A stretch of DNA of 64,000 nt from Styela clava (lineage: Eukaryota), in NCBI RefSeq assembly GCF_964204865.1, contig NC_135251.1, positions 24,366,001 through 24,430,000 on the forward strand, written 5' to 3'. The notes beneath the pieces were generated by a model. That model did not search any database and was not told the origin of the DNA. It worked only from the letters and a program-made list of their open reading frames with translations. The position numbers and the translations under genes were made by a program. This document shows positions 321 through 26,220 of the stretch, piece by piece. Positions within the stretch are counted from its first letter, which is position 1; every line of letters begins with the position of its first letter.

Positions 321-9456
<9,136 letters not shown>

Positions 9457-11948: not shown

Positions 11949-14509
11949 ATGAAACAGAAGATTGGGTTCGTGGTGCTTCTTCAGGCCTTACAGGTCTTGG
12001 CGGCGCCTGAGCTGATGTCACAATGTGATGGGAGTGTTACGGTATGTGAAGGAATCGTCATAAAATCTTTTCATTCGTATAAAATAGTCTAATTAACAAG
12101 ACTAAAGCCTATTGGTTGTGAATACACGTAACACTTTTTAGAGAAATATTTTTGCATGGAAATTATATTGAAAAAATATATCATTGTGAATGAACGAAAA
12201 TTAGCCGCTAACTCAGTATATTCGACGAAAATGTTTTCTTGGTGCAACAAAAGCGGAAAGTTCAGACAAACAATGCTTTTGTTATAAGTGTGTACATACA
12301 ACCACTTTAATAAAAAAACTTAATAAGAAATACAAATCGGCAACATTTGCTTTTAAATGACATATTTACACTCAACTAACTCAATCAAATATTCCAAAGG
12401 AATCCGTTTATTCTTACAATGTAAATACATTGGATGATCAAGCAGTGGATTTGGGTCTGTTCAACGGATCGATTGCTGTTATCATGAACTCAGCATGCTT
12501 CTGAGGTTTAACACCGACCATGCTACCCGGCATGAATGCACTTCTCACGGTGAGTATATTTACCCTTTGAGTAATCATTCCAAGATGCATAATATTCAAG
12601 CCACCCCCAAATACCACTAGTACATTACATGCAAAATTTAAAAAAAATCTGCTATATTGCAATGAAAAAATGAGAACAACCAGATGCCGAACAGTTTTGA
12701 ACCGCAGAAAGGATAATTTTTTAAATTCATAAATCGCAATGAAACGTTTCTATTCTATTCGGTGGTGATTCCAGTTATTACATAAAATTTAGAAATCTAT
12801 TGTCTAAAGCCCCTGCCAACGCTCAAAACAAGAAAGTTAGTAATTATCCAGTCAGGGTTAGGAATGCAGGTTGAGCTGGAAATTCAAATTTTCTAATCAT
12901 AGCTGACCCTAACCCCAACTGGATAATTTGGTATTTTAAAACTTTGCGGGAGTGTTTTTCAAACTTTTCAAACATTAGTGGCGGAGGTTGGTACAAAATA
13001 TACAAATTGTCGATACGCTAACTTATATGCTAGTGTACATGGCACATCAATCAAAATGAAATATGTCTAGTCAAAATGACTAGTCGACAGCGCATACATA
13101 GTTTAAATAATAGTGGCCTTTTTTAACAGAAATATGAGGAAGCCGGAGTAGTTGGTCTAGGGTTCCCCTGTAACCAATTCAAAAAACAAGAGCCAGGGAG
13201 GCCCGATGAAGTGATGAATTGTTACGAGTTTGTTCGTCCAGGGGAAAGTTGGGCACCACACAACTTGTACAACATCTTTGGTAAAGTCGACGTCAACGGA
13301 GTATCGGCGCACTCACTTTATAAATTCTTAAAGGTACTTTACTTTGTTTATGTTCAATTTTCAATACGCTGCGTGCGTTCTCGTAAGCTAACTGCGACCT
13401 TCCTATATCTGATACAGCACCTGATAAACTCCCTTTCAATATAATCACCATTTGGCGTGACACCGATACAGAAATATGACTTAAATGAAGGTTAAAAACG
13501 ATAAAGTGGTATAATTTAATATTTGGTTGTTTTCCGCAAAACCTTGAAGCAGTCATGTGGATATACTTAGATAATCATAAAATTCTTGGTAACTGTATAC
13601 CTATGGCATTCAATGCTAAATTTTCTTAATAAATTCTTCTATTGCAACAAGGCTTCTTGTCCCGCGGTAACAGAGAACATCGGTAATAGACAACTGATGT
13701 ATTGGGATGATATAGATGCTCGCGATGTCACATGGAACTACGGAAAGTTTCTCATCGACTCTACCGGAAAACCAAGGTAATTCATATGACTGGAGATTTC
13801 AAATCAGAACCGGTTATTCGATGTCTGAAGCTAAAAAATTGAAAAAATAGGTTGATTACGCTTCCACTCGAAGACTTTTGACACTTAGTAATTCAGTTGC
13901 TCTATTCATAGGCTTACCATATATCTGAGACAAAATAAAGGGGCAGTACGGATGGGACGAGCCAACCTTGGCTCGATTCTGAGGCTTAGTAATAGTTTAA
14001 TCTGTTTCCATGCCTTTGTGGGTATATTACGGTCGTCAAAATTAGCTGTGAATCATATTAAAATATCCGCTATTGGTTTTGCCTTCAATAATGGAAATCC
14101 CCTTTCAACACACTTTAGAAAACTTGTTTTTTTTTGGCATTTTGATGATTCAGCGACAGTACGGTCGGGTGTTAACGCATGGCTCATACTTTATATCATA
14201 ACTATGGCAATATAATCTAAACTAGTGAAGTGAGTTGCAAAGCGGTGGTAAATCAGCTACCTCAGTTATAAAAAAGTTTGTATCATTATTAAATGAGAAA
14301 TTGTTGTCATACTGCATGGACGGGACATTTAGGTCAACCGGCCGGGACGGCGGGACAACATGCTAAAATCGGGACGTATGGTAAGACTATCTATTCAGTT
14401 ACATATCCCATTATTTTTCAGGTATCGATTCGGACCTACCGTTACACTTGATCAGCTCTACCCGTATGTAGATGAGCTTATTGAAGAACGAGATGATATG
14501 ACCAAGTAA
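11949..14509 (+). CDS. GPX: Secreted selenocysteine glutathione peroxidase (GPx3-like). Exons 11949-12041, 12400-12549, 13130-13333, 13652-13776, 14422-14509; Sec codon TGA at 12502-12504
   Basis: Signal-peptide-like N-terminus MKQKIGFVVLLQALQVLA, then NSACF-U-GLT, GFPCNQF..QEPG, VRPG, FGKVDVNG and WNYGKFLID. All splice phases are compatible and a SECIS lies downstream. An alternative in-frame ATG is at 11913. Confidence 0.93.
13909..14389. mobile_element. hAT-type MITE in the last GPx intron
   Basis: TIR TAGGCTTACCATA...TATGGTAAGACTA with a perfect TSD tctattca. Confidence 0.88.
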
Positions 14510-14931: not shown

Positions 14932-15183
14932 TAGACAAGAGAGCTATGCTCAAATATATGGACACGTAGCGCCACCCAGCGGGAATAATTTTGATGACGT
15001 CATAGCCTTCTGGAGAAAAATTTTATCTTCAACCACTGAAAATTTCAAAGCAATTGGTCCAGTATTCGAAGAGAAAAGCGATTTCTTCAAAACGTGTCAA
15101 AGAACAAGGACACTAAGAACAACAATAAGAACAACAACAACATAATAGTAAAACGAGCGCTATGTCCACTACGTGTCCAATAA
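14932..15183 (+). mobile_element. Short dispersed repeat, possibly Helentron/DINE-like; a related copy is at ~20397-20765
   Basis: Starts ACAAGAG, has an inverted ggacacg/cgtgtcc pair and an (AAC)n tract near the 3' end. The second copy shares acaagag..ctcaaatatat and aacaacaacataata. The family assignment is inference. Confidence 0.5.
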
Positions 15184-17486
15184 CAGCATCGTATATATAT
15201 ATATGTATATATATAAAGATCCCAGACATATTTCAATGATAACCACGTAAGATATATATATATATATCCTGCATTCTGGAAAAGTACTAAATTCCAACAA
15301 ATTTGTAATTTGGCGGATGTGTTAAGTTTTGGTTAACAGTCAATTGCGAATTAGACAAGTATATTTACCTTGATATAACGCAAAAAGAAAGACTCTGACT
15401 AAAATTTACAGATGTGTGTAGACAACGACCCGCACTAGACAACTTTTCTTGATTCTCGCGCGTCCATAATTATTGGGCCAATGTATCGTTTGGCTGAAAT
15501 GTTTTTTTTTTCGTTATTGTTGGAGAAAAATCGCTTTTATCCGCAAACAATGGAACAATCGACCACATTTCTATGCTTGAAGATTGTTGAAGTCGCTGTA
15601 AGGATATACTGTATATTACTTTTTATAATTTCGTATGGGGCGTGTTTGCAGGAAATTTTTCTGGTTAATTTAAATTTATGTGAAATTTAATATGGAGTAT
15701 AGAAAAACTTTATAACGTCAACCTTGTCTGCCTTCATCACGCTTGTCTACCAATCTTGTCTGCAAACTTGGTTTTGATGCTAAGCTAGAACGCCGAACCG
15801 TACCGGCACGGATGATCTTCATGTCCGTATATTTTATCATATTACTTTCGCTTAATTATCGGTCTGTATGCAAGTGTTATTTTTATGTCTGATGTATCTT
15901 ATTTGAGCTCTAAGCCAAATATTGGCAGCTTGTCTTCTAGCTCCCAACAAAATGCATCAAATTCCATTGGAAAGATGTTTCAAGATGTTTTAATTTTACA
16001 TACAATTATTAGCGCTTCGATGATTGGTTGCAACTAACTTTTTTGTGACTTTTTGACAATGTGTAAAAATTAAAAATACATACAAGTAATATATATATTC
16101 ATAATTAATAATACAAACAGTTATTTATGCGAATGTTCAAATAAATAAATATTTTAATAATACTCATACAAGTGTCAAATATACACAAAAAAATTTATTA
16201 AAATAGCACAGGCTTTTGATTTCAATTTTATCATTATGAAAATAAACTCAATTTGCTGAATGATTGGCTAGGTAAAATTGCCAAGATTTTTTTGCATATC
16301 GCATATGGTATAAGAATTAGTAAATTACGAATAAATACTATTTGCTTAAATTTTGTATTCATATACAAATGTGGTATTTATCATAGGCATTCATATCAGG
16401 TATTCAGATAAACATATGATGAATTTAAATACCGCTGGAAATGCCATAAAAGTTCCATTGTCCTGAATATTTTAATTTATCTTCAATGACAATGCGAACC
16501 GGTAATTTTGCATAATCTCCGATGACGGAAGTTGAATAAATAAATTCTATATTCAAATGAACTCGGAAAGTTTTATTATTTTTATTTTTAAATAAACTTA
16601 TTATTAAAGCCAGCTCCATTATTATATTTAAATTCAGAGCAACGCTCTGTACAAACTGGTATAATATTTGTACCACTTGTTGAGTTCAAATTTCAGTGAA
16701 AACTTCAATCGTTTTTAAAAAGTAATTCTAAGCGCACCACTCATCAGACAACTATATTACCATACACAAAAAACTCAGCATCACTGATGCAATAACTATC
16801 ATCCTATCATCCCTTATCAAAATGTCTGTTTGTGCGCGTTTGAATTGGTGTCTTTAAACCAATTGTTTGTAAAAACTCTATTTTTAATTACGCCGTCTCA
16901 TATGCATTGAATTGACAAATTCAATTTTCGGATGTAAAATTACGCTGCAAATACCTGCAATTATAAATTTGTTTTGATTTGAATTATAAAAACACAAGCG
17001 GAAATATGCAAAATTACCCAACACACAACAAACAAAAAATTTAAATTTCAAACAATTGCACATACCGTGCCATCTGGTATTAATCGTGTCAGGCAACTAG
17101 GAAGCTTTGCTTTATGAAAATTTCTGAAGGCGATGCAACATAATAGATTTGTTAATTTGAACGACAGCAGCTAATATACTGAAAAATATTCTTGCTTCCA
17201 GCACAAAAAACTTCGTATTTGGTTTTAGCAACTCCATTTGTAATCAGTTGAAAATGGACGGAAAAACGATATTAAACCCAATAATATTTGTACCTTCTTG
17301 ACCCCACTATAGCTTCCAAATATGACATTTTTTTAGTATTAAGTAAATTTACAACGATATTGGGTTTCTAATATTTTCCTTGTGGAGAAGTGATTCATAG
17401 TAGATATGAACCCAGTACTTGACACGCAATGTGCGGCTGGGGACTCTGAGACTAATGTATAATAATTAACAACAATCGCTTATTTC

Positions 17487-17876
17487 TAGGGCTGGGCATT
17501 TTCGAATACCTGATGATTTCAGAATTGATCGAATTATTTTTTCGAATCGAATCGAATCTCGAATACTTGGAAGGTATGAAATTGTATGTAACTTTCTTAT
17601 CATTTTAGGTCCTCCAGACACATAAATTACTGAAAACATAGAATACATCACTGACAATAAAAAAACACGTTTTCATCAATACCTCAATACAGAAAAGAGT
17701 CATATGTCAGAATTGTGTTGAAAAAATATGGCTTCAATCAAAAAAAATTGAGAAATTTACCTCGACCATTGGTAGAAAGAGTGAAACAAGATGGCGGCGA
17801 TTCGAAAATTTGCTCTAAACCGATTCGAATAATTTTCGATTCGATTCGAATATTCGATTCGAAATGCCCAGCCCTA
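17487..17876. mobile_element. hAT-type MITE
   Basis: TIR TAGGGCTGGGCATTT...AAATGCCCAGCCCTA, perfect TSD cttatttc, TTCGAA-rich subtermini. Confidence 0.9.
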
Positions 17877-18496
17877 CTTATTTCCAAATCTAAAATGGTA
17901 ATTTAGCAATCTACATTTCCAGTATTATGGAGTTTAAAATGAGAATGACACAACCGATCTTTGGATATAATGCAATGAAAGCATGTACATATAACCACCT
18001 ACTTTGAACGTACGAACACATTTGACTAAATCTCGACATTATCATGACTGGAAAAATTGTTGATGTTAGTGTAATTTGTATGAAGATTGTTTAGAAAAAA
18101 TATATATATACATTAGATCTCAATATTAAAAAGTATTCCGTGTAGGTTTTAAGAAAATGGTTTTCGGTTAGCAAGCCAACCCTCGCTATGAACCAGGAAT
18201 TAACCTCAAATGGTCTGTTGGGAAATATTACCAATACAAATTTTTGTTCTCAAACAATTCCCATACATGATTTTGTAAAATAAAATATGTTACAAAATTT
18301 GAATACGAAAGTAGAGAACCTTTATCTATCAAAGTATGGACCAATTGTCCGCTATAGATCTTTTAATATTCTAGGGAAGACTTCTGAAAAACGAATCATT
18401 CACTTGCACATTCCCCACAATGTGCTATTGTCTTATTGGCGATAAACAATAATGCCAAACAATTCCCCAAATGATGCAAAATAGTGGATTGTAGTG

Positions 18497-18581
18497 TATA
18501 AATAGTGGAATGCGACAACAGCAATCCACTTCGAGAAGATATTGCCTTTACTACACGTAGTTTTGAAACATAAAGATACAG
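18497..18581 (+). promoter_or_regulatory. TATA box and non-coding exon 1 of peptide gene A
   Basis: gtataaatag, then a leader conserved with paralog B (caacagcaatccacttcgagaagatattg), ending at the donor cag|gtatgt. Confidence 0.7.
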
Positions 18582-19039
18582 GTATGTATATTAACAAAAT
18601 ATTTCGTTAGCATGTTGAATTACATTCGTGTTACAGTAAATATTGCCAGTCGTCATTTGCTGTAGGCCAACTTGACAGTAAATAAACCCAGATAATAAAT
18701 GTTCACTATGTTTGTGTGTTGCGTGGTATGTTCTATATTTTCAACTAGTGGAAAAAACAACATTTCAGGCTTAACACAGACAGACCACATTAAACAGAAA
18801 AGACACGTGAAGATTTTTCGACAATTATCTCTTCGATTACATCGGTTCAATTTCACTTTTGTGATGCATCAACTAGATCAAGCATCAAACTAGATCAATC
18901 ACTAGATGATGCTTTGATCAAGTTTCTTCGCGTTAATCTAAATACAATTTAGTTTATTGGTATTAGTCAAACATTGACGTCGTCCAAGAGAAATTATACA
19001 TGGCCATTAATTTTATTTATATCACAACAGGTTTGCAAA

Positions 19040-20027
19040 ATGAAGCTGGTTATTGCCCTTGTTCTTGTTGCAATTTTTGCATTCGAGGAGAGTGACGCAC
19101 GATACGTAAGTAGAGGAGCCTACAATATTCAAGTTCGACAAGTCGCGTACTGGAGAAATCGTTACAGCGCACTTGCTAGAAGTTACAATGCACTCGCAAG
19201 TAGATGCAGAACTGTGAGTTACACCCGGTACAACAGACTACTTGCAGGATACCGCAAACTGGTGGCGTTCGTGAATCGCATGCGTGTCGCATCTCACAAT
19301 ATGCATAACACTCACAGGTAGGATTGCTAGGTCTAAAATTGACCAATTGTTTCAATATTGGATTCTTGTTTGTATTAATCAAAGTCGAATAAATACATAT
19401 TATACCGATGAAAGACGTGATGCCGAATCATCAGTTATTTAAATAAATTATTCAAATCTCTCGTCCTTTATATATACATTCCGCCAAAAGTACTCGATAC
19501 TTTAGGATTCCACATTCCTGGGCTAATTCACATCAACAAAATAATTGGTAAATAATCTAAGAATCAATAATTTTATTATATCATGAAATCTCTCGCAAAT
19601 TTCTAAAAAAATTTAACAGACGTATTGCCGGTGGAGACGAAGACATGCCAGAAATGCAGCTTGTTGAGGTATAGTCTATTTATATAGAATAAGTTAGTAA
19701 AATGTTGATGGAATCATTTACAAAATTCGTTCAAATATAATAATGTTTTATTTGTACGCGAAGGGTGAAGGTCAAATATTATAAATCACAATACACGAGT
19801 GATGGGTAACTTATATACATCTATATACAGGACTCAGAAGACATGAATGAACTCCTGAATTTGCTTCCTGAATTCAACGAAGATGTCGACGACCTCCCTG
19901 CCTTGAGTAAGACAGAAAATATTTTCAGAATTCATTTTATTGCCGTAAACCCCTTATTTATTTATTTATTTTACTTTCAGCCGAAGAGGTCGAACAAGAT
20001 GAAGAAATTGAGAAATCCGAAGACTAA
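19040..20027 (+). CDS. Secreted cationic/anionic peptide precursor A, 149 aa, antimicrobial-peptide-like. Exons 19040-19317, 19620-19668, 19831-19906, 19981-20027
   Basis: Signal MKLVIALVLVAIFAFEESDA, then an R/Y-rich segment RYVSRGAYN...THRRIAGG, then an acidic tail DEDMPEM...EKSED*. Splice sites and phases are identical in the paralog. Confidence 0.88.
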
Positions 20028-21499
20028 TCGATTTTTCCAGGCAAGCATAGATGACAGAAAAATTGCAACTGAAACTGTGATTCGTATATGTGCTGCTCAT
20101 TTGGTTATTGTTAATTTAGTGCAAAATAAACAGATCCATCTTTTGATGATGTTTATCCTATAATCCAGATCGACTTAAAAAATTTAATAATTGATTGGAT
20201 TCTTTGTAATTTTTTTTCGAGGTGGGGGTCGTCGAGGCATGGCGAAGGCGAATATATATATATGTATTTATAAGGTGGATATACACGTGTAATTATCTGC
20301 AGACACATGTTAGTCCGGGCATTTCATATCTGATATCCTCGACAAAATCAAACCCAAAATTGCAAGTGTTAGGTAAAAACACATTAAGTGTTATTAAGAC
20401 AAGAGAATGATTCTCAAATATATAGTCACGAATGCCAAAACATTTCACATCAACGGCAGCTTATCCTCAGCTTAACAAAACAGGTATCGGAAAACTTTCT
20501 CGTAGCACAATTTCGCAAAATCAACACGGAAGAGAGTCGTCACACTTTGCGGATCAATAACGGGGTTCCCATTAAAAAAATAATATACAGTAAAATTTAG
20601 GATGAAATATCAGTCGTTATTGGATTTATATAAAATTTAGAAGAAAATAAAAGTCAACAATCTTTAATCACTGAATATTTCAATTAACAAGAAGAAAATA
20701 CCAACAAGAAGATCAACAACAACATAATAACAAAACGCCCCATACATACCTTTCTTGTCCAACAAATAGCAAAATAAACAAACTTAAATACAGCTTAAAT
20801 GGTGTATAGTACATTTTATGCCAAACCCAAACTAAAATCAGAATGTACGCGGAGTACAAACAACTGCGCTGCTAATTAGTAACTATGACATGCTAGTAGT
20901 TGACGTTAGACATAATTTACTGATTGACGTGACCATGGATTTCGAAACACTGATGAGAAGATTGTGATCAGCTCCCAATATTTCGGCGCTGTTTTTACCA
21001 ATAAGTCGAGTAAAAACTGCAAAACTGCAAAACAGGTTGCCAACATGTGCAACGATGCAAAAGCAGTCCATGTAATTCAAATTCCCATCAATCGCTTGCA
21101 GAGCGATGAGTATATTTCAGGTTTGAAGTAATATAAAGTTGAAAGTTCAAAATGAATTATAAAGTTATGGTTTACACCGACATTCAATGGATGGTGCCCA
21201 CTCCCAGGCCTTTCTTTGTTTATATCTGTAAAAAAGGAAATCAGCAGTAAGTCAACAATTGTAATTTGAACTGCCGCTCAGACATTCTTCCGCTCAGACG
21301 CATGGTTTGTCAGCATTGTTGTTTCCCCGACCTTTGACCCTAGGCAAATTCTCTCTATACTTTAGCCTTACGAATGTTTTCATGCTTATTATGGAATTGT
21401 TTTAGTGAGTTAGCGCTTACAAACTGGTTAAATGATAAAAAACGTCAAATATTAATAAAAAAAATATTTAACCACGTGTCGCTTAATTTAAGGTATTGG

Positions 21500-21957
21500 T
21501 AGGCTTACCATACGTCCCGCTTTTCAGCGTTTTGTCCCGCCGTCCCGATAAGTCAGCCAAAAGTCCCGCTTTTCCAGCATAATACACAAACATGTTCTCG
21601 TTACTGTTGTTTCTGTGTAGCGCAGCGCTAGCCTACTTACTGAAGATGAATGCGTTCGTTTTCTGCTGATTCCCATTGATGGCAGACGTATCGCATGTAA
21701 AACCAATACTAATTAGTCTAAATTCGAATTATTTGTACCGGTATCGTTAACGTCAATTCCTTCCTATTTTTCGAACTGAACCCGATATTTGGACAGAGAA
21801 TATGCGCATGAAATTCCGATAACAATATGGTCAATAAACACAGCCGAGATAGCTTTAAATGTAGGAATGTAGGCCTATGTAGTAAAATCGGAAAATGTGA
21901 AGTTATGAAAACACAGCTAAGGGGTCGTTGTCTTTCGAGAAAAATATGGTAACCCTA
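21500..21957. mobile_element. hAT-type MITE
   Basis: TIR TAGGCTTACCATA...TATGGTAACCCTA, perfect TSD ggtattgg, GTCCCG subterminal repeats. Confidence 0.88.
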
Positions 21958-23680
21958 GGTATTGGTAGCTGAATTTTAGACTTGTCTATCGCAGCTTTTT
22001 CGTAACTACGGTAACTAATATTGCAACTAAGCTAAAGCTCCTACGAAGTCATAATGACAATTAAGTTATATGATTTTTAACCAATTTTTGGAAACAAAAA
22101 TGAAAACTGACAAATAACACGCAAAACTAAGAAAACGGGGCAATGTTTAAAATCAAGCTTAAATATCTGTCTGAGCGGTTAGACAAATTTCAATTGGTGT
22201 GCTCGAGGAAACATTCATTGTCTCGTTTTCGTGGTTTTTGCGAGTTAATTTTTAGTTTTGAGTTGTGTTTCCAACAATAAGTTGTAAATGAAATAACAGA
22301 ATTAAAAATCATGTCTTCTGAAGAGTTTTAGTGTAGTTGAAGTAAATAAAAGTTTCTCCCCAGTCTAAAATTAACTATCAGAACCTTCACGTGGTTGAAT
22401 ATTTTTAATGAAAATAATGGCCTTGTACATGTAAATGTGATTGTAATCGCTGATTTCAAAACACTCTCAAAAGAGCATCAAAAATTTTTCATTTAGCAAA
22501 CTTTTTGTATTTTTATACTTTCAGTGTATTTACATTTACTTATAACGTAATTATGATCTAGAGAAAAGTAGGTAAATATGGACATTTACGCTCTGTAAGA
22601 TCAAAATTACTTGCTGCAATGTGCATTTATTAATTATCTCAGGACAATCAGGATTTAACGGTGTAAAATTACAATTCAATCAGAAATTTTCTACAATTTG
22701 AATGACAAAAACAAAAGCGAGAATATGCAAAACAACCTAATACACAAAGAACAGAAAATTTAAATTCTAAACGATTGCTCTCATCGTGCCATCTGGTATT
22801 AATTGCGTCAAACAGGAAGCGTTGCTTCATGAACATTTCAATGCAAAAATATAACTCAGATGTGGCTTCAAATCTCTTATTTTATTTATATTACAACTGT
22901 TCTTTTTAGATTTAAAGTTATTGTTTATATTTAGGAACGCTATTTTAAAAAGCGAACCCGTGAATTTTGTACCCGCTATATCTTCAAAATATGACATGTT
23001 TTTGCACATCGCTAAAAATTGGATTTTAGTATTTGTCTTGCGGAGAAGTGATCCATACTAAACCCATCTCAATACTTGACACGCAATGTAGGGAGATGGA
23101 TTCTGGAAGTTCATTAACAAACATTTTCAAATAATTGTCTACGTTGAAAATCTAGTATACACACATTTCACTGAATCTCGATACTAATATAAAAATCGGA
23201 ATGTTTTTGTAACTTTACTAATGAAAAATGTGTGGGTTTCGGCATTGTGTATATTTCTTTATGCACGTCTTTTTTTAAATTATCAAATCGGTTGTGAAAT
23301 AGTTTACAGTTAGTAGCCTGAGCCGGAGCGATTGCCAACTTCAGGAAATAAACCAGGAAATAACCGCAAATGGTCTGTTACAAAATTTTGTTCATACAAA
23401 TGAAATCTCTCGAACAATTCATACAGAGTTTTGTGAAGATCAAAGCGTTAAAAAATTGGAATTCAAAAGTAGACCATCTTTGGATATCAAATTATCAGCA
23501 GTGGATCTTTGAATATTTCCGGAAAGCCTTATAATTTACAAACAACAGAACAACTCGAAATTTTGAATAACTGATCATTCGTTTGCATATTGCGCACAAT
23601 CTGTCATGGTCCTATTGCTTATAACAATAATTCGATTTTAATAGAAAGTTCTTAATGAATGCAAAATAGTAGATGGCAGT

Positions 23681-23765
23681 GTATAAATAGAGGAATCCGA
23701 CAACAGCAATCCACTTCGAGAAGATATTGTCTTTACTACACATTGTTTGGAAACATAAACCACAG
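23681..23765 (+). promoter_or_regulatory. TATA box and non-coding exon 1 of peptide gene B
   Basis: gtataaatag plus a leader homologous to gene A; donor cag|gtatga. Confidence 0.7.
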
Positions 23766-23854
23766 GTATGAATCTAATCTAATTCGGTTTAATCTAATAC
23801 TTCGTTCAGAGTATATAGACATTTTTTTTATTTATGTCACAACAGGTTTGCAAC

Positions 23855-24873
23855 ATGAAGCTAGTCATTGCCCTTGTTCTTGTTGCAATTTTTGCATTCG
23901 AGGAGAGTGACGCTCGATACGTGAGTAGAAGAGCCTACAATATTAAAGTTCGACAAGCCGCGTACTGGAGAAGACGTTACATCGCACTCGCTAGAAGTTA
24001 CAATGCACTCGAATCTAAATGCAGAACTGTTAGTTACGGCAAGTACATCAAACTTCTGACGCACTACCGCAGACTGTTGGCGTTCGTGAACCGCATGCGT
24101 GCTGCATCTACCAATATGCACAACGTTCACAGGTAGGACTGTTATAGTAGGCTCAAACAAGCCAATTTTTTCAATATGGGGTATGCATTGTGTATGTGTT
24201 GAAGACAAATAAATACGTACTGATCAAGCAATGTGGTGTCGAATTATCGTTTTTATTTTTTTTATGTGTGTGTGTTACCACCATTGGAGTTATTGAGCAA
24301 CCTCGCCTATTATTCGCTGCATCAAAAAATCTCGTTAGCCTACTTCAAGATTCCATATTTATGGGCCAGTTTATACCAATGAATATAGTTGGTGAAATAT
24401 CTTAGTAAATAATAGTTTTATTATGTGGTGAAATTTCTCAAATTTTTCAATATAACCATGGCACATATGACTTTTTTAACAGCCGTATTGCCCGTGGAGA
24501 TGAAGACATGCCAGAAATGGAGCCTGTCGAGGTATAAATAAATTATACATTCATTTACAAAATGTATTTAATCAAATATAATATTTTTTACTATACAAAA
24601 ACAGCACGGATTAGTTTAAACTATAATAAATCACAGTACATAAGTGAACGCTAATTTATATCCATACAGGACTCAGAAGACGTGAATGAACTCCTGGATT
24701 TGCTTCCTGAATTCAACGAAGACGCCGAAGACCTCCCTGCCTTGAGTAAGACAGAAAAGATTTTTGGATTTTTTTTTATTCTCGTATCTCCTTTTACCCC
24801 CGTTTATTTGTTTCTTTTACTTTTAGCCGAAGAAGTTGAACAAGATGAAGAAATGGAGAAATCCGAAGACTAA
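23855..24873 (+). CDS. Secreted cationic/anionic peptide precursor B, 149 aa, paralog of A. Exons 23855-24132, 24483-24531, 24670-24745, 24827-24873
   Basis: Identical 20-aa signal peptide, cationic segment RYVSRRAYN...VHSRIARG, acidic tail, and the same exon lengths as gene A (278/49/76/47). Confidence 0.88.
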
Positions 24874-25391
24874 ACGATTTTTCCAGTCAAGAACAGATCA
24901 CAGAAAATTTGCAATCGGAAGTCCAATACTTTTATGTTGCTTATTTGTTTATTGTCAAATTATTGCAAAAAAAAAAGCAGATCCATCTTTTGATGAAGTT
25001 TATCATATAACCATGATCGAATTCAAATAAAATTGATTATTTGATGGAATTCTCTGTTTCTTATCAATGTCTTAATAGGGTCAGGAGGAATAGGATTTCG
25101 TGCCAATGTAATACAACGCCATGGAAACTACTGAGTGGATTCCTTCGCGACATGATATTTTAGATTACCAAACAGATCTCGTCAGGTGCTTCGTTCTGGT
25201 AATATTAGGCAACTTAGAAACATTTGGGAGGCAACATCAGGGTGTTGTAAATGTGAAAAACAGGGCTGCCGAAAGTTCGAGCTGTCCGCGCGATGAATTT
25301 TTGCAGTTTACCACAGGCCTACAAGGATGACGAGCTCAAAAAAGTGCTTCGTTCAAATCTGTTTGCGCTACATTTCGAAATCATTTGTATA

Positions 25392-26220
25392 ATATCGTCA
25401 CGCTAATAACCGAATTGCGTAAGTCATTTTTGGCGATTTTGAGTTTTTTATAAAATAGGTATTTATGTAATGCTGCGCACCTGTCTGTTAACTCAGATTT
25501 TATTTTAAGAATTCCGAAACCCATAAAAATGGAGATTTAGTATGACATGCACATTTGTGCAATTGTTTCGTCATAATGAATTATCATTATTACCGCAGGA
25601 CTATTGTGACGTCACAAAGGCAAAATAACCTCGGCGAAGTATTTTCGAGTTTTTGCATCTCGGATTTTAGCTTAGCGCGTATTAATTTAAATTTACACTA
25701 CAGTATAGGAGGACGTGCACTTGTGATATTCACTGTCCGAGTCCAATTCACCTTGGTTGGCTTTTATATTGGGTGCATTGCTGTTTTATTCTTTATATTT
25801 AATCTTAGTCTTATTTCGGTGGGTGTGCAGAACGTGTTATATCGATGAAATATATATTTTTAAACTTAAAAATAATGTAATTGAAACTGATTAGCTATTT
25901 TCTGGATTAGACATTGTAGATACTGAGAATTACATTCGTTTTTGGAATGTTTAGTTTTCAGGACTGGTGCATATAGTAAAGTTGCAAAATTGCGTATGTC
26001 CCCAAGTCATAGACACATTTCTGCCTAAGTCACAGTGCGCCATTATGACGTCACTCAACTGCGTCATACAAATTAACTTAAATCCGGCTACGATCAAAAA
26101 ATTGAACCATGGCAAATTATTGACTCTCAATGGCATAACAATATCATTAGACAGTTTTTTACGTTTTTCTCAAAATTGCTAAAAATGACTTACGCAATTC
26201 GGTTATTAGCGTGACGATAT
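25392..26220. mobile_element. Non-autonomous DNA transposon with ~50-bp TIRs
   Basis: atatcgtcacgctaataaccgaattgcgtaagtcattttt and its reverse complement ending at 26220. TA/AT at the junctions; superfamily not determined. Confidence 0.85.

What the first reader, a model, noticed from the sequence alone, without database searches (positions are those of the whole stretch)
18497..24873. Tandem pair of unrecognised secreted precursors with antimicrobial-peptide architecture
Seen: two 5-exon genes, each encoding a 20-aa signal, a ~78-aa Arg/Lys/Tyr-rich segment with almost no acidic residues, a Gly-Asp junction and a 51-aa Asp/Glu-rich tail. Known: ascidian haemocyte AMP precursors (clavanins, styelins, Ci-MAM/Ci-PAP) use the signal, cationic peptide, anionic extension layout, often with a Gly amide donor. 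Inference: this is a new family. I do not recognise the mature sequence, and it is much longer than clavanins or styelins. The ORF track hides the acidic tail because it is split over three small exons.
Basis: partly seen in the sequence, partly recalled or inferred. Interest (0 to 1): 0.8.

Follow-up and report, generated by a model that had tools for sequence, protein, structure and literature searches.

The report
Sea-squirt cationic secreted precursor gene pair

Summary
Window 18497-20199 and 23682-~25046 hold two paralogous TATA-driven genes, each with one 5'UTR exon and four coding exons. Each encodes 149 aa: a 20-aa signal, a 78-aa basic Arg/Tyr-rich part (net +16/+18), a Gly-Asp junction and a 51-aa acidic tail (-22/-24). 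Every intron is seen as a GT..AG joint in RNA-like contigs from three studies and not in a DNA run.

NCBI already lists both as "uncharacterized protein" (LOC120336842/LOC120336841). No paper found names them, and there is no Pfam, PDB or other-species match.

They are not an isolated pair. They are a divergent branch of a Styela clava multigene family: at least 12 genes on C18 and probably 12 more on C3. The family shares a conserved signal peptide, the same intron phases, one Cys, an invariant Gly at the basic/acidic junction and an acidic tail.

This layout matches the documented ascidian cationic-helical AMP precursors, and the amidated clavanins use the same Gly-Asp junction. The cationic part here is far longer (about 77 aa, two predicted helices). 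Processing, tissue and antimicrobial activity are untested.

The scan noted similar cationic/acidic pairs before on other DNA of this genome (s1-819792, s1-810830).

The parts
18497..18505 (+). Gene A TATA box (TATAAATAG) in a promoter conserved with gene B
   Evidence: Read in the sequence. The promoter and 5'UTR alignment is 83% identical overall and nearly perfect from the TATA box through exon 1.
18527..18581 (+). Gene A exon 1, non-coding 5'UTR. The start is inferred as about 25-30 nt after the TATA box; the end is at the donor GT at 18582.
   Evidence: In one search an X6 contig joins an exon-1-like piece (with the letters GAT between, specific to gene A) to 19027/19031. The start of transcription was not mapped.
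19031..19317 (+). Gene A exon 2: ATG at 19040, the 20-aa signal and 72 residues of the basic domain. It ends in phase 2.
   Evidence: joint 19317->19620 in X1, X5 and X6.
19620..19668 (+). Gene A exon 3: end of the basic domain, the Gly-Gly-Asp junction and the start of the acidic tail (R RIAGGDEDMPEMQLVE)
   Evidence: joints on both sides.
19831..19906 (+). Gene A exon 4: acidic tail with the conserved MNELLNLLPEF motif. It ends in phase 1.
   Evidence: joint 19668->19831; a loose end at 19906 continues with the letters of exon 5.
19981..20199 (+). Gene A exon 5: the last 14 codons plus the stop (20025-20027) and the 3'UTR. Poly(A) is added after 20199.
   Evidence: In one search a loose run of 23 A lies behind 20199 in X1, and the genome is not A-rich there.
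23682..23690 (+). Gene B TATA box (TATAAATAG)
23712..23765 (+). Gene B exon 1, non-coding 5'UTR (start inferred)
   Evidence: In one search the joint 23765->23846 is seen in X5 and X6. Low-depth contigs also start further upstream (23318 and 23428).
23846..24132 (+). Gene B exon 2: ATG at 23855, the signal and 72 residues of the basic domain
24483..24531 (+). Gene B exon 3: the junction (S RIARGDEDMPEMEPVE)
24670..24745 (+). Gene B exon 4: acidic tail (DSEDVNELLDLLPEFNEDAEDLPAL)
24827..25046 (+). Gene B exon 5: the last codons, the stop at 24871-24873 and the 3'UTR. The 3' end is inferred from homology with gene A's poly(A) site.
   Evidence: joint 24745->24827; contigs reach at least 25010; repeat D9.
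15115..25030 (+). Two copies of a tandem duplication unit of about 5.3 kb (about 15115-20200 and about 20697-25030), each carrying one gene
   Evidence: nine collinear direct-repeat families, 74-91% identical, with spacings of 4815-5719.

Best explanation
Each gene makes a secreted 149-residue pre-pro-protein of the ascidian cationic-peptide/acidic-propiece type.

Shown:
- Both genes are transcribed from TATA promoters, spliced as modelled and polyadenylated. Their transcripts are very abundant in one study.
- The product has a classical N-terminal signal and a 78-aa Arg/Tyr-rich part of pI about 11.7, predicted as two long helices with one conserved Cys.
- A Gly at the basic/acidic junction is invariant across the family.
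- A 51-aa tail carries about the opposite charge.
- The pair belongs to a tandemly expanded family, so far seen only in S. clava, in which the signal peptide is strongly conserved and the cationic part evolves several times faster.

Inferred:
- After the signal is removed, the acidic tail neutralises the cationic domain during transport and granule storage.
- Cleavage at the invariant Gly, as in clavanin precursors where that Gly supplies the C-terminal amide, frees a polypeptide of about 9.2-9.3 kDa (residues 21-97). It may be amidated and may form a disulfide-linked dimer through Cys56.
- This cationic helical hairpin then binds polyanionic targets, most likely microbial envelopes. That would make it a host-defence effector, far larger than clavanins or styelins.
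For: Gene structure and transcription.

Charge blocks.

Helices: AlphaFold predicts helices at 25-58 and 61-96 (pLDDT 60-72) and a mostly disordered tail.

Amphipathicity: 59 (A) and 49 (B) 18-residue windows meet the hydrophobicity, moment and charge thresholds used to find Ciona LCAMPs. The top moments are 0.54 and 0.44 (thresholds from PMC7387483).

Junction precedent: the clavanin gene of this genome reads ...GFSHVF-G-DDQQ..., and clavanins are C-terminally amidated (PMC8719109).

Family membership:
- Invariant junction Gly and exactly one Cys in 7 of 7 NCBI models.
- Shared intron phases 2, 0, 1.
- BLASTP of the exon products against the C18 gene in L003: E 6e-9 and 5e-5.
- hhalign of the C2 profile against the C18 profile: probability 97%, E 7e-11.

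Selection: dN/dS between A and B is 0 for the signal, 0.74 for the basic part and 0.35 for the tail. Other family pairs show the same ranking.
Against: - Nothing here shows processing, tissue, inducibility or activity.
- The cationic part is 2-3 times longer than any proven ascidian linear AMP.
- Its amphipathicity is only moderate, and the thresholds it passes are lenient.
- It has a Cys and 149 residues, so it would have been excluded by the Ciona screen itself.
- No dN/dS exceeds 1.
- There is no conserved dibasic site, and the protease that would cut at Gly-Asp is unknown.
- The structure model has low confidence (mean pLDDT 55).
- With the signals removed, an HMM of the C18 proteins does not score the C2 proteins above block-shuffled controls (p 0.075 and 0.17). 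Much of the family link therefore rests on the signal peptide, the intron phases and the bridging gene L003.
Confidence: 0.45

Rival explanations
1. The protein is an unprocessed, secreted structural or matrix protein. It would act as a block polyampholyte whose Arg/Tyr-rich half binds polyanions (sulfated glycans, cellulose-associated matrix, mucus) or is cross-linked through modified tyrosines, in tunic, adhesive or mucus-net material. The acidic half would control solubility or coacervation.
For: - Contig depth is very high in one RNA study (at least 25,000, against 150-790 in two others), as expected of a bulk secretory product.
- All 8 Tyr, the Trp and the Cys are conserved between A and B, although 20 of the 78 residues of the basic part differ.
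- There is a weak, sub-threshold compositional match to mussel foot protein 3 (PF04202, E 0.32, 11.9 bits against a cut-off of 22).
- DOPA-type modification is known for S. clava haemocyte peptides (styelin D, as cited).
Against: - The Mfp-3 match is not significant and includes the signal peptide.
- At 10%, the Tyr content is far below that of DOPA adhesive proteins.
- There are no repeats, no Gly/Pro/Ser-rich low-complexity regions and no known matrix domain.
- An invariant junction Gly with a conserved signal and a variable cationic part is the pattern of processed effector precursors.
Confidence: 0.2
2. The protein is a secreted signalling or developmental factor, such as a metamorphosis-associated or cytokine/hormone-like polypeptide, rather than a direct antimicrobial. 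The cationic helical hairpin would act as a ligand and the tail as a pro-region.
For: - Several Ciona genes with the same layout were first named as metamorphosis genes (Ci-META4 and Ci-META6 in the table of PMC7387483).
- The printed Ci-META6 acidic helix contains an ELLLNLLKE-like stretch that resembles ELLNLLPE here.
- The run lists suggest stage- or tissue-restricted expression: only one run of the 2018 study is listed as holding it.
Against: - Tandem expansion to a dozen or more fast-diverging paralogues with extreme charge is unusual for ligands.
- No receptor-type constraint is visible (dN/dS 0.74 in the candidate ligand part).
- The resemblance to Ci-META6 was not tested, because that sequence could not be used in the tools.
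Confidence: 0.12
3. The intact protein is itself the functional form. The basic helices and the acidic tail would pair within or between molecules to form a compact or oligomeric charge-zipped particle, for example a storage or packaging protein of secretory granules, with no released peptide.
For: - The two halves nearly cancel in charge (+16/-22 in A, +18/-24 in B; pro-protein pI about 5.1-5.2).
- The tail is better conserved than the basic part (86% against 74% identity; dN/dS 0.35 against 0.74).
- The tail motif MNELLNLLPEF is predicted helical (residues 111-127).
Against: - AlphaFold does not pack the tail on the helices and gives it pLDDT below 50.
- Pro-pieces that are better conserved than the mature peptide are also typical of AMP precursors.
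Confidence: 0.1

Closest known systems
Ciona linear cationic alpha-helical AMP precursors (Ci-MAM, Ci-PAP and the candidates in PMC7387483)
   Same: - The order of parts is the same: signal peptide, cationic amphipathic helical region, anionic helical C-terminal pro-region.
- The signal peptide is conserved within a family while the cationic part diverges.
- Acidic residues sit right at the boundary, rather than dibasic sites.
- Some members carry Arg runs, as the C18/C3 relatives do.
   Different: - No sequence match appeared in any search.
- The precursor is 149 aa rather than 50-100 aa.
- The cationic part is about 77 aa with two predicted helices and one Cys, rather than 18-35 Cys-free residues.
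- Activity and haemocyte expression are unknown here.
Clavanin precursors of Styela clava (Pfam PF05452)
   Same: - Same species.
- The cationic peptide is followed directly by Gly and then Asp and an acidic extension.
- That Gly is the amide donor of the amidated mature peptide.
   Different: - There is no PF05452 match.
- The clavanin genes lie on C1 and have two coding exons.
- The signal peptide is different.
- Clavanins have a short acidic N-terminal pro-piece and a 23-aa His/Phe-rich peptide.
Styelins of S. clava and botryllin of Botryllus schlosseri
   Same: - Styelid haemocyte peptides made as pre-propeptides.
- The botryllin precursor has a similar length (158 aa, 23-aa signal).
- They are Tyr-bearing cationic peptides that can be heavily modified.
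   Different: - The mature peptides are 32-37 aa.
- No styelin or botryllin protein was among the hits of three database searches whose length windows covered them.
- A direct alignment was not possible, because no tool supplied their sequences.
Frog skin preprodermaseptin-type families (from general knowledge; PMC7387483 notes that LCAMP precursors have highly conserved signal peptides)
   Same: One conserved secretory signal exon and an acidic pro-region are combined with hypervariable cationic effector parts in a tandemly expanded family.
   Different: - In frogs the acidic pro-piece comes before the peptide and is cut at Lys-Arg. Here it follows the peptide and the boundary is Gly-Asp.
- The lineages are unrelated.

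Membership tests
Clavanin (Pfam PF05452) | Match to the family profile above its cut-off (21 bits) | tested here: not met
   There is no PF05452 hit for the exon products or for P0001-P0007, even at E 10. In the genome the profile hits only C1:10.538 and 10.574 Mb above the cut-off.
Clavanin (Pfam PF05452) | Cationic peptide followed by Gly (the amide donor) and an acidic C-terminal extension | tested here: met
   The junctions read IAG-G-DEDM and IAR-G-DEDM, against HVF-G-DDQQ in the clavanin gene. This is a resemblance in layout only.
Styelin / botryllin | Detectable sequence similarity to styelin or botryllin precursors | tested here: not met
   The searches of 5.8 billion proteins and of 1.84 billion representatives returned only S. 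clava 'uncharacterized protein' entries. The searches are limited by shared 5-residue words, and no direct pairwise test was possible.
Ascidian LCAMP-type precursor (signal / cationic helix / anionic pro-region; PMC7387483) | N-terminal signal peptide | tested here: inconclusive
   The sequence reads MK, then 13 hydrophobic residues, then EESDA with small residues at -1 and -3. The position aligns with the ...GDS cut region of the family. No SignalP was available.
Ascidian LCAMP-type precursor (signal / cationic helix / anionic pro-region; PMC7387483) | Cationic amphipathic helical region (18-residue windows with H 0-0.6, moment 0.1-1.0, charge +3 to +10) | tested here: met
   59 (A) and 49 (B) windows pass, all within residues 21-98. 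Helices are predicted at 25-58 and 61-96. The thresholds are lenient.
Ascidian LCAMP-type precursor (signal / cationic helix / anionic pro-region; PMC7387483) | Anionic (helical) C-terminal pro-region | tested here: met
   The tail has net charge -22 (A) and -24 (B). 31 (A) and 38 (B) windows pass the anionic criteria. A short helix is predicted at 111-127.
Ascidian LCAMP-type precursor (signal / cationic helix / anionic pro-region; PMC7387483) | Signal peptide conserved within the family while the mature part diverges | tested here: met
   Alignments are. dN/dS is 0-0.15 for the signal against 0.25-0.74 for the mature part in six paralogue pairs.
Ascidian LCAMP-type precursor (signal / cationic helix / anionic pro-region; PMC7387483) | Short precursor (50-100 aa) and a Cys-free cationic peptide, as used in that screen | tested here: not met
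   The precursor is 149 aa and has one Cys at position 56.
Ascidian LCAMP-type precursor (signal / cationic helix / anionic pro-region; PMC7387483) | Antimicrobial activity of the released peptide; haemocyte expression or induction | not testable with these tools
   The runs are coded and kept as contigs, so tissue and level cannot be read. No assay was possible.
Mussel foot protein 3 (Pfam PF04202) | Match to the family profile above its cut-off (22 bits) | tested here: not met
   The match scores 11.9 bits, E 0.32, over residues 3-50 including the signal. It is compositional.

The most novel reading that the evidence does not exclude
The pair would encode a new structural class of ascidian host-defence protein: a 9-kDa helical hairpin rich in Arg and Tyr, C-terminally amidated and possibly dimerised through Cys56. 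It would be the outlying branch of a Styela-specific superfamily of 25 or more genes on C2, C18 and C3. In that superfamily one conserved signal exon and an acidic-tail cassette, with fixed intron phases and an invariant junction Gly, have been combined with very different cationic effector domains. This would be an ascidian counterpart of the frog preprodermaseptin system.
Probability: 0.25. Interest if true: 0.7.

Novelty: new variant of a known kind. Interest (0 to 1): 0.5.

Why it matters
Styela clava is the classic source of tunicate antimicrobial peptides, the clavanins and styelins. Recent reviews still list only those for this species.

A tandemly expanded, highly transcribed and so far species-restricted family with the same precursor logic, but much larger cationic domains, would widen the known host-defence repertoire of the vertebrates' sister group. 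It would give a set of natural variants for studying salt-tolerant cationic polypeptides. It would also offer a clear case of a conserved secretory signal and pro-piece cassette carrying rapidly diverging effector domains.

If the proteins turn out to be structural, the family would instead be a new type of charge-block matrix protein. Either way, about two dozen 'uncharacterized' gene models would gain a testable hypothesis.

Tried and rejected
1. Named families. Pfam on the exon products and on seven full-length family models gave only sub-threshold noise: VPS51_Exo84_N at E 0.04-0.06 and Mfp-3 at E 0.32. A PDB sequence search found nothing.

2. Relatives in other species.
   - The word-seeded search with the exon-2 product, with a 13-sequence exon alignment and with a 7-sequence full-length alignment returned only S. 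clava proteins.
   - The exhaustive phmmer search of 1.84 billion representatives did the same.
   - These databases hold few tunicate proteins, so absence elsewhere is not shown.

4. Homology of the mature parts alone. An HMM of the C18 proteins without their signals did not score the C2 proteins above block-shuffled controls (p 0.075 and 0.17). I therefore do not claim homology of the cationic domains on sequence alone.

5. A genome search with the 25-aa exon-4 peptide found only the two genes themselves.

6. Fold search was not run. The model (mean pLDDT 55, a helical hairpin) would give meaningless matches.

7. Literature.
   - No paper mentions LOC120336842 or LOC120336841.
   - The supplements of the 2023 endostyle RNA-seq paper do not contain the ids, and the 2024 atlas has no supplements held as text.
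   - I could not identify the tissue of the coded runs.

8. Variants seen in RNA contigs near 19108-19287 were not interpreted. Several equal the gene-B state and lie near contig ends, so cross-mapping between the paralogues is likely.

9. Rfam found no RNA family in 18000-25400.

10. Joined exons. Spliced models were searched exon by exon. The full-length sequences used later are the public NCBI models returned by the tool. dN/dS was computed per exon and the counts were summed.

11. Styelin, botryllin, Ci-MAM and Ci-META sequences printed in papers or known from memory were not typed into tools, so the direct comparisons with them were left out.

Full report
**What is there**

The window belongs to Styela clava chromosome-scale contig C2. 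Between 18497 and about 25046 lie two head-to-tail paralogous genes. Each starts with a TATAAATAG box (18497-18505 and 23682-23690) and a short non-coding exon. A second exon begins 9 nt before the ATG and encodes the signal and most of a basic domain. Three small exons then encode the end of the basic domain and an acidic tail.

The intron phases are 2, 0 and 1 in both genes. My exon-by-exon translations agree with two public NCBI models of 149 aa. Both are named only 'uncharacterized protein': LOC120336842 (P0001, gene A) and LOC120336841 (P0002, gene B, one allelic difference, F15I).

The two genes sit in a tandem duplication of about 5.3 kb (about 15115-20200 and about 20697-25030). Coding exons are 84-91% identical and flanking DNA 74-79%. 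The promoter and 5'UTR are almost identical from the TATA box onward. The neighbours are unrelated housekeeping genes.

**Are the genes real?**

Contigs of three RNA-like runs from three different studies (X1, X5, X6) cover only the exons. They carry GT..AG joints exactly at the predicted borders of introns 2 and 3 of gene A and introns 1-4 of gene B.
- Intron 4 of gene A shows as a loose end at 19906 that continues with the first letters of exon 5.
- Intron 1 of gene A shows as a contig joining an exon-1-like piece to 19031.
- A 23-A tail follows 20199, where the genome is not A-rich.
- A DNA-like run (X10) covers the whole stretch evenly at about 50x and has none of these joints. The intergenic DNA has zero depth in the RNA-like runs.

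Contig depth on the exons is at least 25,000 in X1, against 150-790 in X5 and X6. This suggests very high abundance in that sample. Contig depth is a poor measure, however, and the runs are coded, so the tissue is unknown.

**The protein**

| Part | Gene A | Gene B |
|---|---|---|
| Signal | 20 aa | 20 aa |
| Basic part | 78 aa, net +16, 0 acidic residues | 78 aa, net +18, 1 acidic residue |
| Junction | GG-D | RG-D |
| Acidic tail | 51 aa, net -22 | 51 aa, net -24 |

The signal is MK, 13 hydrophobic residues, then EESDA. Each basic part has 15 Arg, 8 Tyr, one Trp and one Cys. The pro-protein has a pI near 5.1-5.2.

AlphaFold2 with the seven-sequence family alignment gives a low-confidence model (mean pLDDT 55). 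It has two long helices (25-58 and 61-96, pLDDT 60-72) and a mostly disordered tail with a short helix over MNELLNLLPEF.

The basic part passes the hydrophobicity, moment and charge thresholds that a published Ciona screen used for cationic amphipathic helices, with top moments of 0.54 (A) and 0.44 (B). The tail passes that screen's anionic thresholds. These thresholds are lenient.

There is no conserved dibasic site inside the basic part.

**No named relatives**

Pfam, PDB sequences, three searches of 5.8 billion proteins and an exhaustive phmmer search of 1.84 billion representatives gave only S. clava 'uncharacterized' proteins. No paper held by the library names the two loci. Reviews up to 2026 list only clavanins, clavaspirin and styelins for this species.

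**Not an isolated pair**

Searching the animal's own genome with the exon-2 product gave two weak hits on contig C18. Reading them showed the same gene plan: a similar signal, a basic Arg/Tyr/His-rich exon ending in phase 2, and three small acidic exons with phases 0 and 1.

A search with one of these found a 74-kb cluster of at least 12 such genes at C18:11.387-11.462 Mb. It also found two clusters on C3, at 7.75-7.77 Mb (3 genes) and 16.15-16.22 Mb (at least 9 genes). The C3 genes share the signal (...LVAILAF-x-x-GDS), a poly-Arg stretch and downstream acidic exons.

Evidence that links the C2 pair to the C18 family:
- BLASTP of the exon products against the C18 gene in locus L003 gives E 6e-9 (48% identity over 50 residues, running past the signal) and E 5e-5 for the exon with the LLxxLPE[FY] motif.
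- A profile-profile comparison of the C2 and C18 models gives probability 97%, E 7e-11 over 87 columns.
- The intron phases are identical.
- In all seven NCBI models there is one Cys after the signal and an invariant Gly exactly at the basic/acidic junction.
- A tree places the pair with L003 (support 90/86, long branches).

A caveat applies. With the signals removed, an HMM of the C18 proteins does not beat block-shuffled C2 sequences (p 0.075 and 0.17). The cationic domains themselves have therefore diverged almost beyond recognition. The link to the C3 clusters rests on the signal, the poly-Arg stretch and the layout only.

**Evolutionary pattern**

Between A and B the signal has 0 non-synonymous and 3 synonymous changes. 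The basic part has dN/dS 0.74 and the tail 0.35. Five other paralogue pairs show the same ranking: signal 0-0.15, cationic part 0.25-0.68. No value exceeds 1, so positive selection is not shown. All eight Tyr, the Trp and the Cys are conserved between A and B.

**Comparison with what is known**

A Ciona study (PMC7387483) reports the following:
- Most linear cationic helical AMP precursors of that ascidian run signal, cationic amphipathic region, anionic helical pro-region.
- Signals are conserved within families.
- Acidic residues, rather than dibasic motifs, flank the boundary.
- Five of five tested candidates killed microbes in vitro.

The clavanin genes of this genome (Pfam PF05452, C1:10.538 and 10.574 Mb) read ...GFSHVF-G-DDQQDNG.... 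Clavanins are 23-residue, C-terminally amidated peptides ending in HVF (PMC8719109). A Gly-Asp boundary with Gly as amide donor therefore has a precedent in the same animal.

Against membership of any named family:
- There is no profile or sequence match.
- The signal differs from that of clavanins.
- There are four coding exons instead of two.
- The cationic part is about 77 residues instead of 18-37.

**Most likely mechanism (inferred)**

The signal is cleaved after Ala20. The acidic tail shields the cationic hairpin during secretion or granule storage. Cleavage at the invariant Gly, with possible amidation, releases residues 21-97 (9152 Da for A and 9337 Da for B if amidated). This fragment may dimerise through Cys56, as single-Cys ascidian AMPs such as halocidin and dicynthaurin do (review text), and then acts on polyanionic microbial surfaces. 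I give this 0.45.

Rivals are an unprocessed charge-block matrix or adhesive protein (0.2), a signalling or metamorphosis factor (0.12), and an intact charge-zipped storage protein (0.1). A non-gene artefact is excluded by the spliced, polyadenylated, abundant transcripts and the constraint on the signal and tail.

**Limits and rules followed**

Full-length sequences used after one search are the public NCBI models returned by the tool.
- Sequences of styelins, botryllin and Ciona peptides from papers or memory were not entered into tools, so those direct comparisons are missing.
- The reads tool gave contigs only. Transcript starts, strand and expression levels are therefore not measured.

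**Verdict**

The 'AMP-precursor architecture' reading is reasonable and has precedents. The claim of a new two-gene family must be widened to a large S. clava family that NCBI already annotates, without a name. The scan had touched parts of this family before on other DNA (s1-819792, s1-810830). Function remains untested. Interest 0.5; novelty: new variant of a known kind.

Noticed in passing
window 21491-21968: A MITE-like element of about 454 nt lies between the two genes. It is flanked by a perfect 12-nt direct repeat (AGGTATTGGTAG) and has 13-nt inverted ends. DNA-run contig depth there is 23,000-68,000 against about 50 elsewhere, so it is a very high-copy repeat. It is weakly present in the RNA-like runs.
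   Followed up: partly
G000:C18:11387808-11461381 (loci L003, L006-L013, L015, L016, L033-L040): A cluster of at least 12 genes on both strands. Each has a conserved signal, usually a poly-Arg run and one Cys, a basic helical exon ending in phase 2, and small acidic exons. NCBI names the five models retrieved 'uncharacterized protein'.
   Followed up: partly
G000:C3:7750266-7770758 (L014, L019, L020) and G000:C3:16152866-16218758 (L017, L018, L021-L024): Two further tandem clusters share the signal peptide and poly-Arg start, and have acidic downstream exons. The first encodes a Lys/Arg/Val-rich stretch that looks like a classical linear cationic helix. The second encodes very short Arg/Trp/Gly-rich peptides. 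They may be the pairs described in earlier notes s1-819792 and s1-810830, but this was not verified.
   Followed up: partly
window 23318-23767: Low-depth RNA contigs start upstream of gene B's TATA box. In X1 one spans 23318-23767 at depth 717, against at least 25,000 on the exons. In X6 one spans 23428-23761 and is spliced to exon 2. This points to a minor upstream transcription start.
   Followed up: no
window 24493-24501: Gene B reads Arg-Gly-Asp (RGD) at the basic/acidic junction, where gene A reads Gly-Gly-Asp. The motif is probably incidental, since it is not shared.
   Followed up: no
L026 1486-1677 and L029 (G000:C1:10.573-10.576 Mb), L027/L028 (C1:10.536-10.540 Mb): Two clavanin genes, each with two coding exons. 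The second exon reads ...KSEEEK-LFKLLGRIIHHVGNFVHGFSHVF-G-DDQQDNGKFYGHYAEDNGKHWYDTGDQ. That mature sequence is not identical to the clavanins A-D printed in PMC8719109.
   Followed up: partly
window 9211-9456 and 13211-13444: Upstream open frames look like exons of housekeeping genes: the C-terminus of an AAA-protease-like protein and a glutathione-peroxidase-like exon. This was judged by eye only.
   Followed up: no
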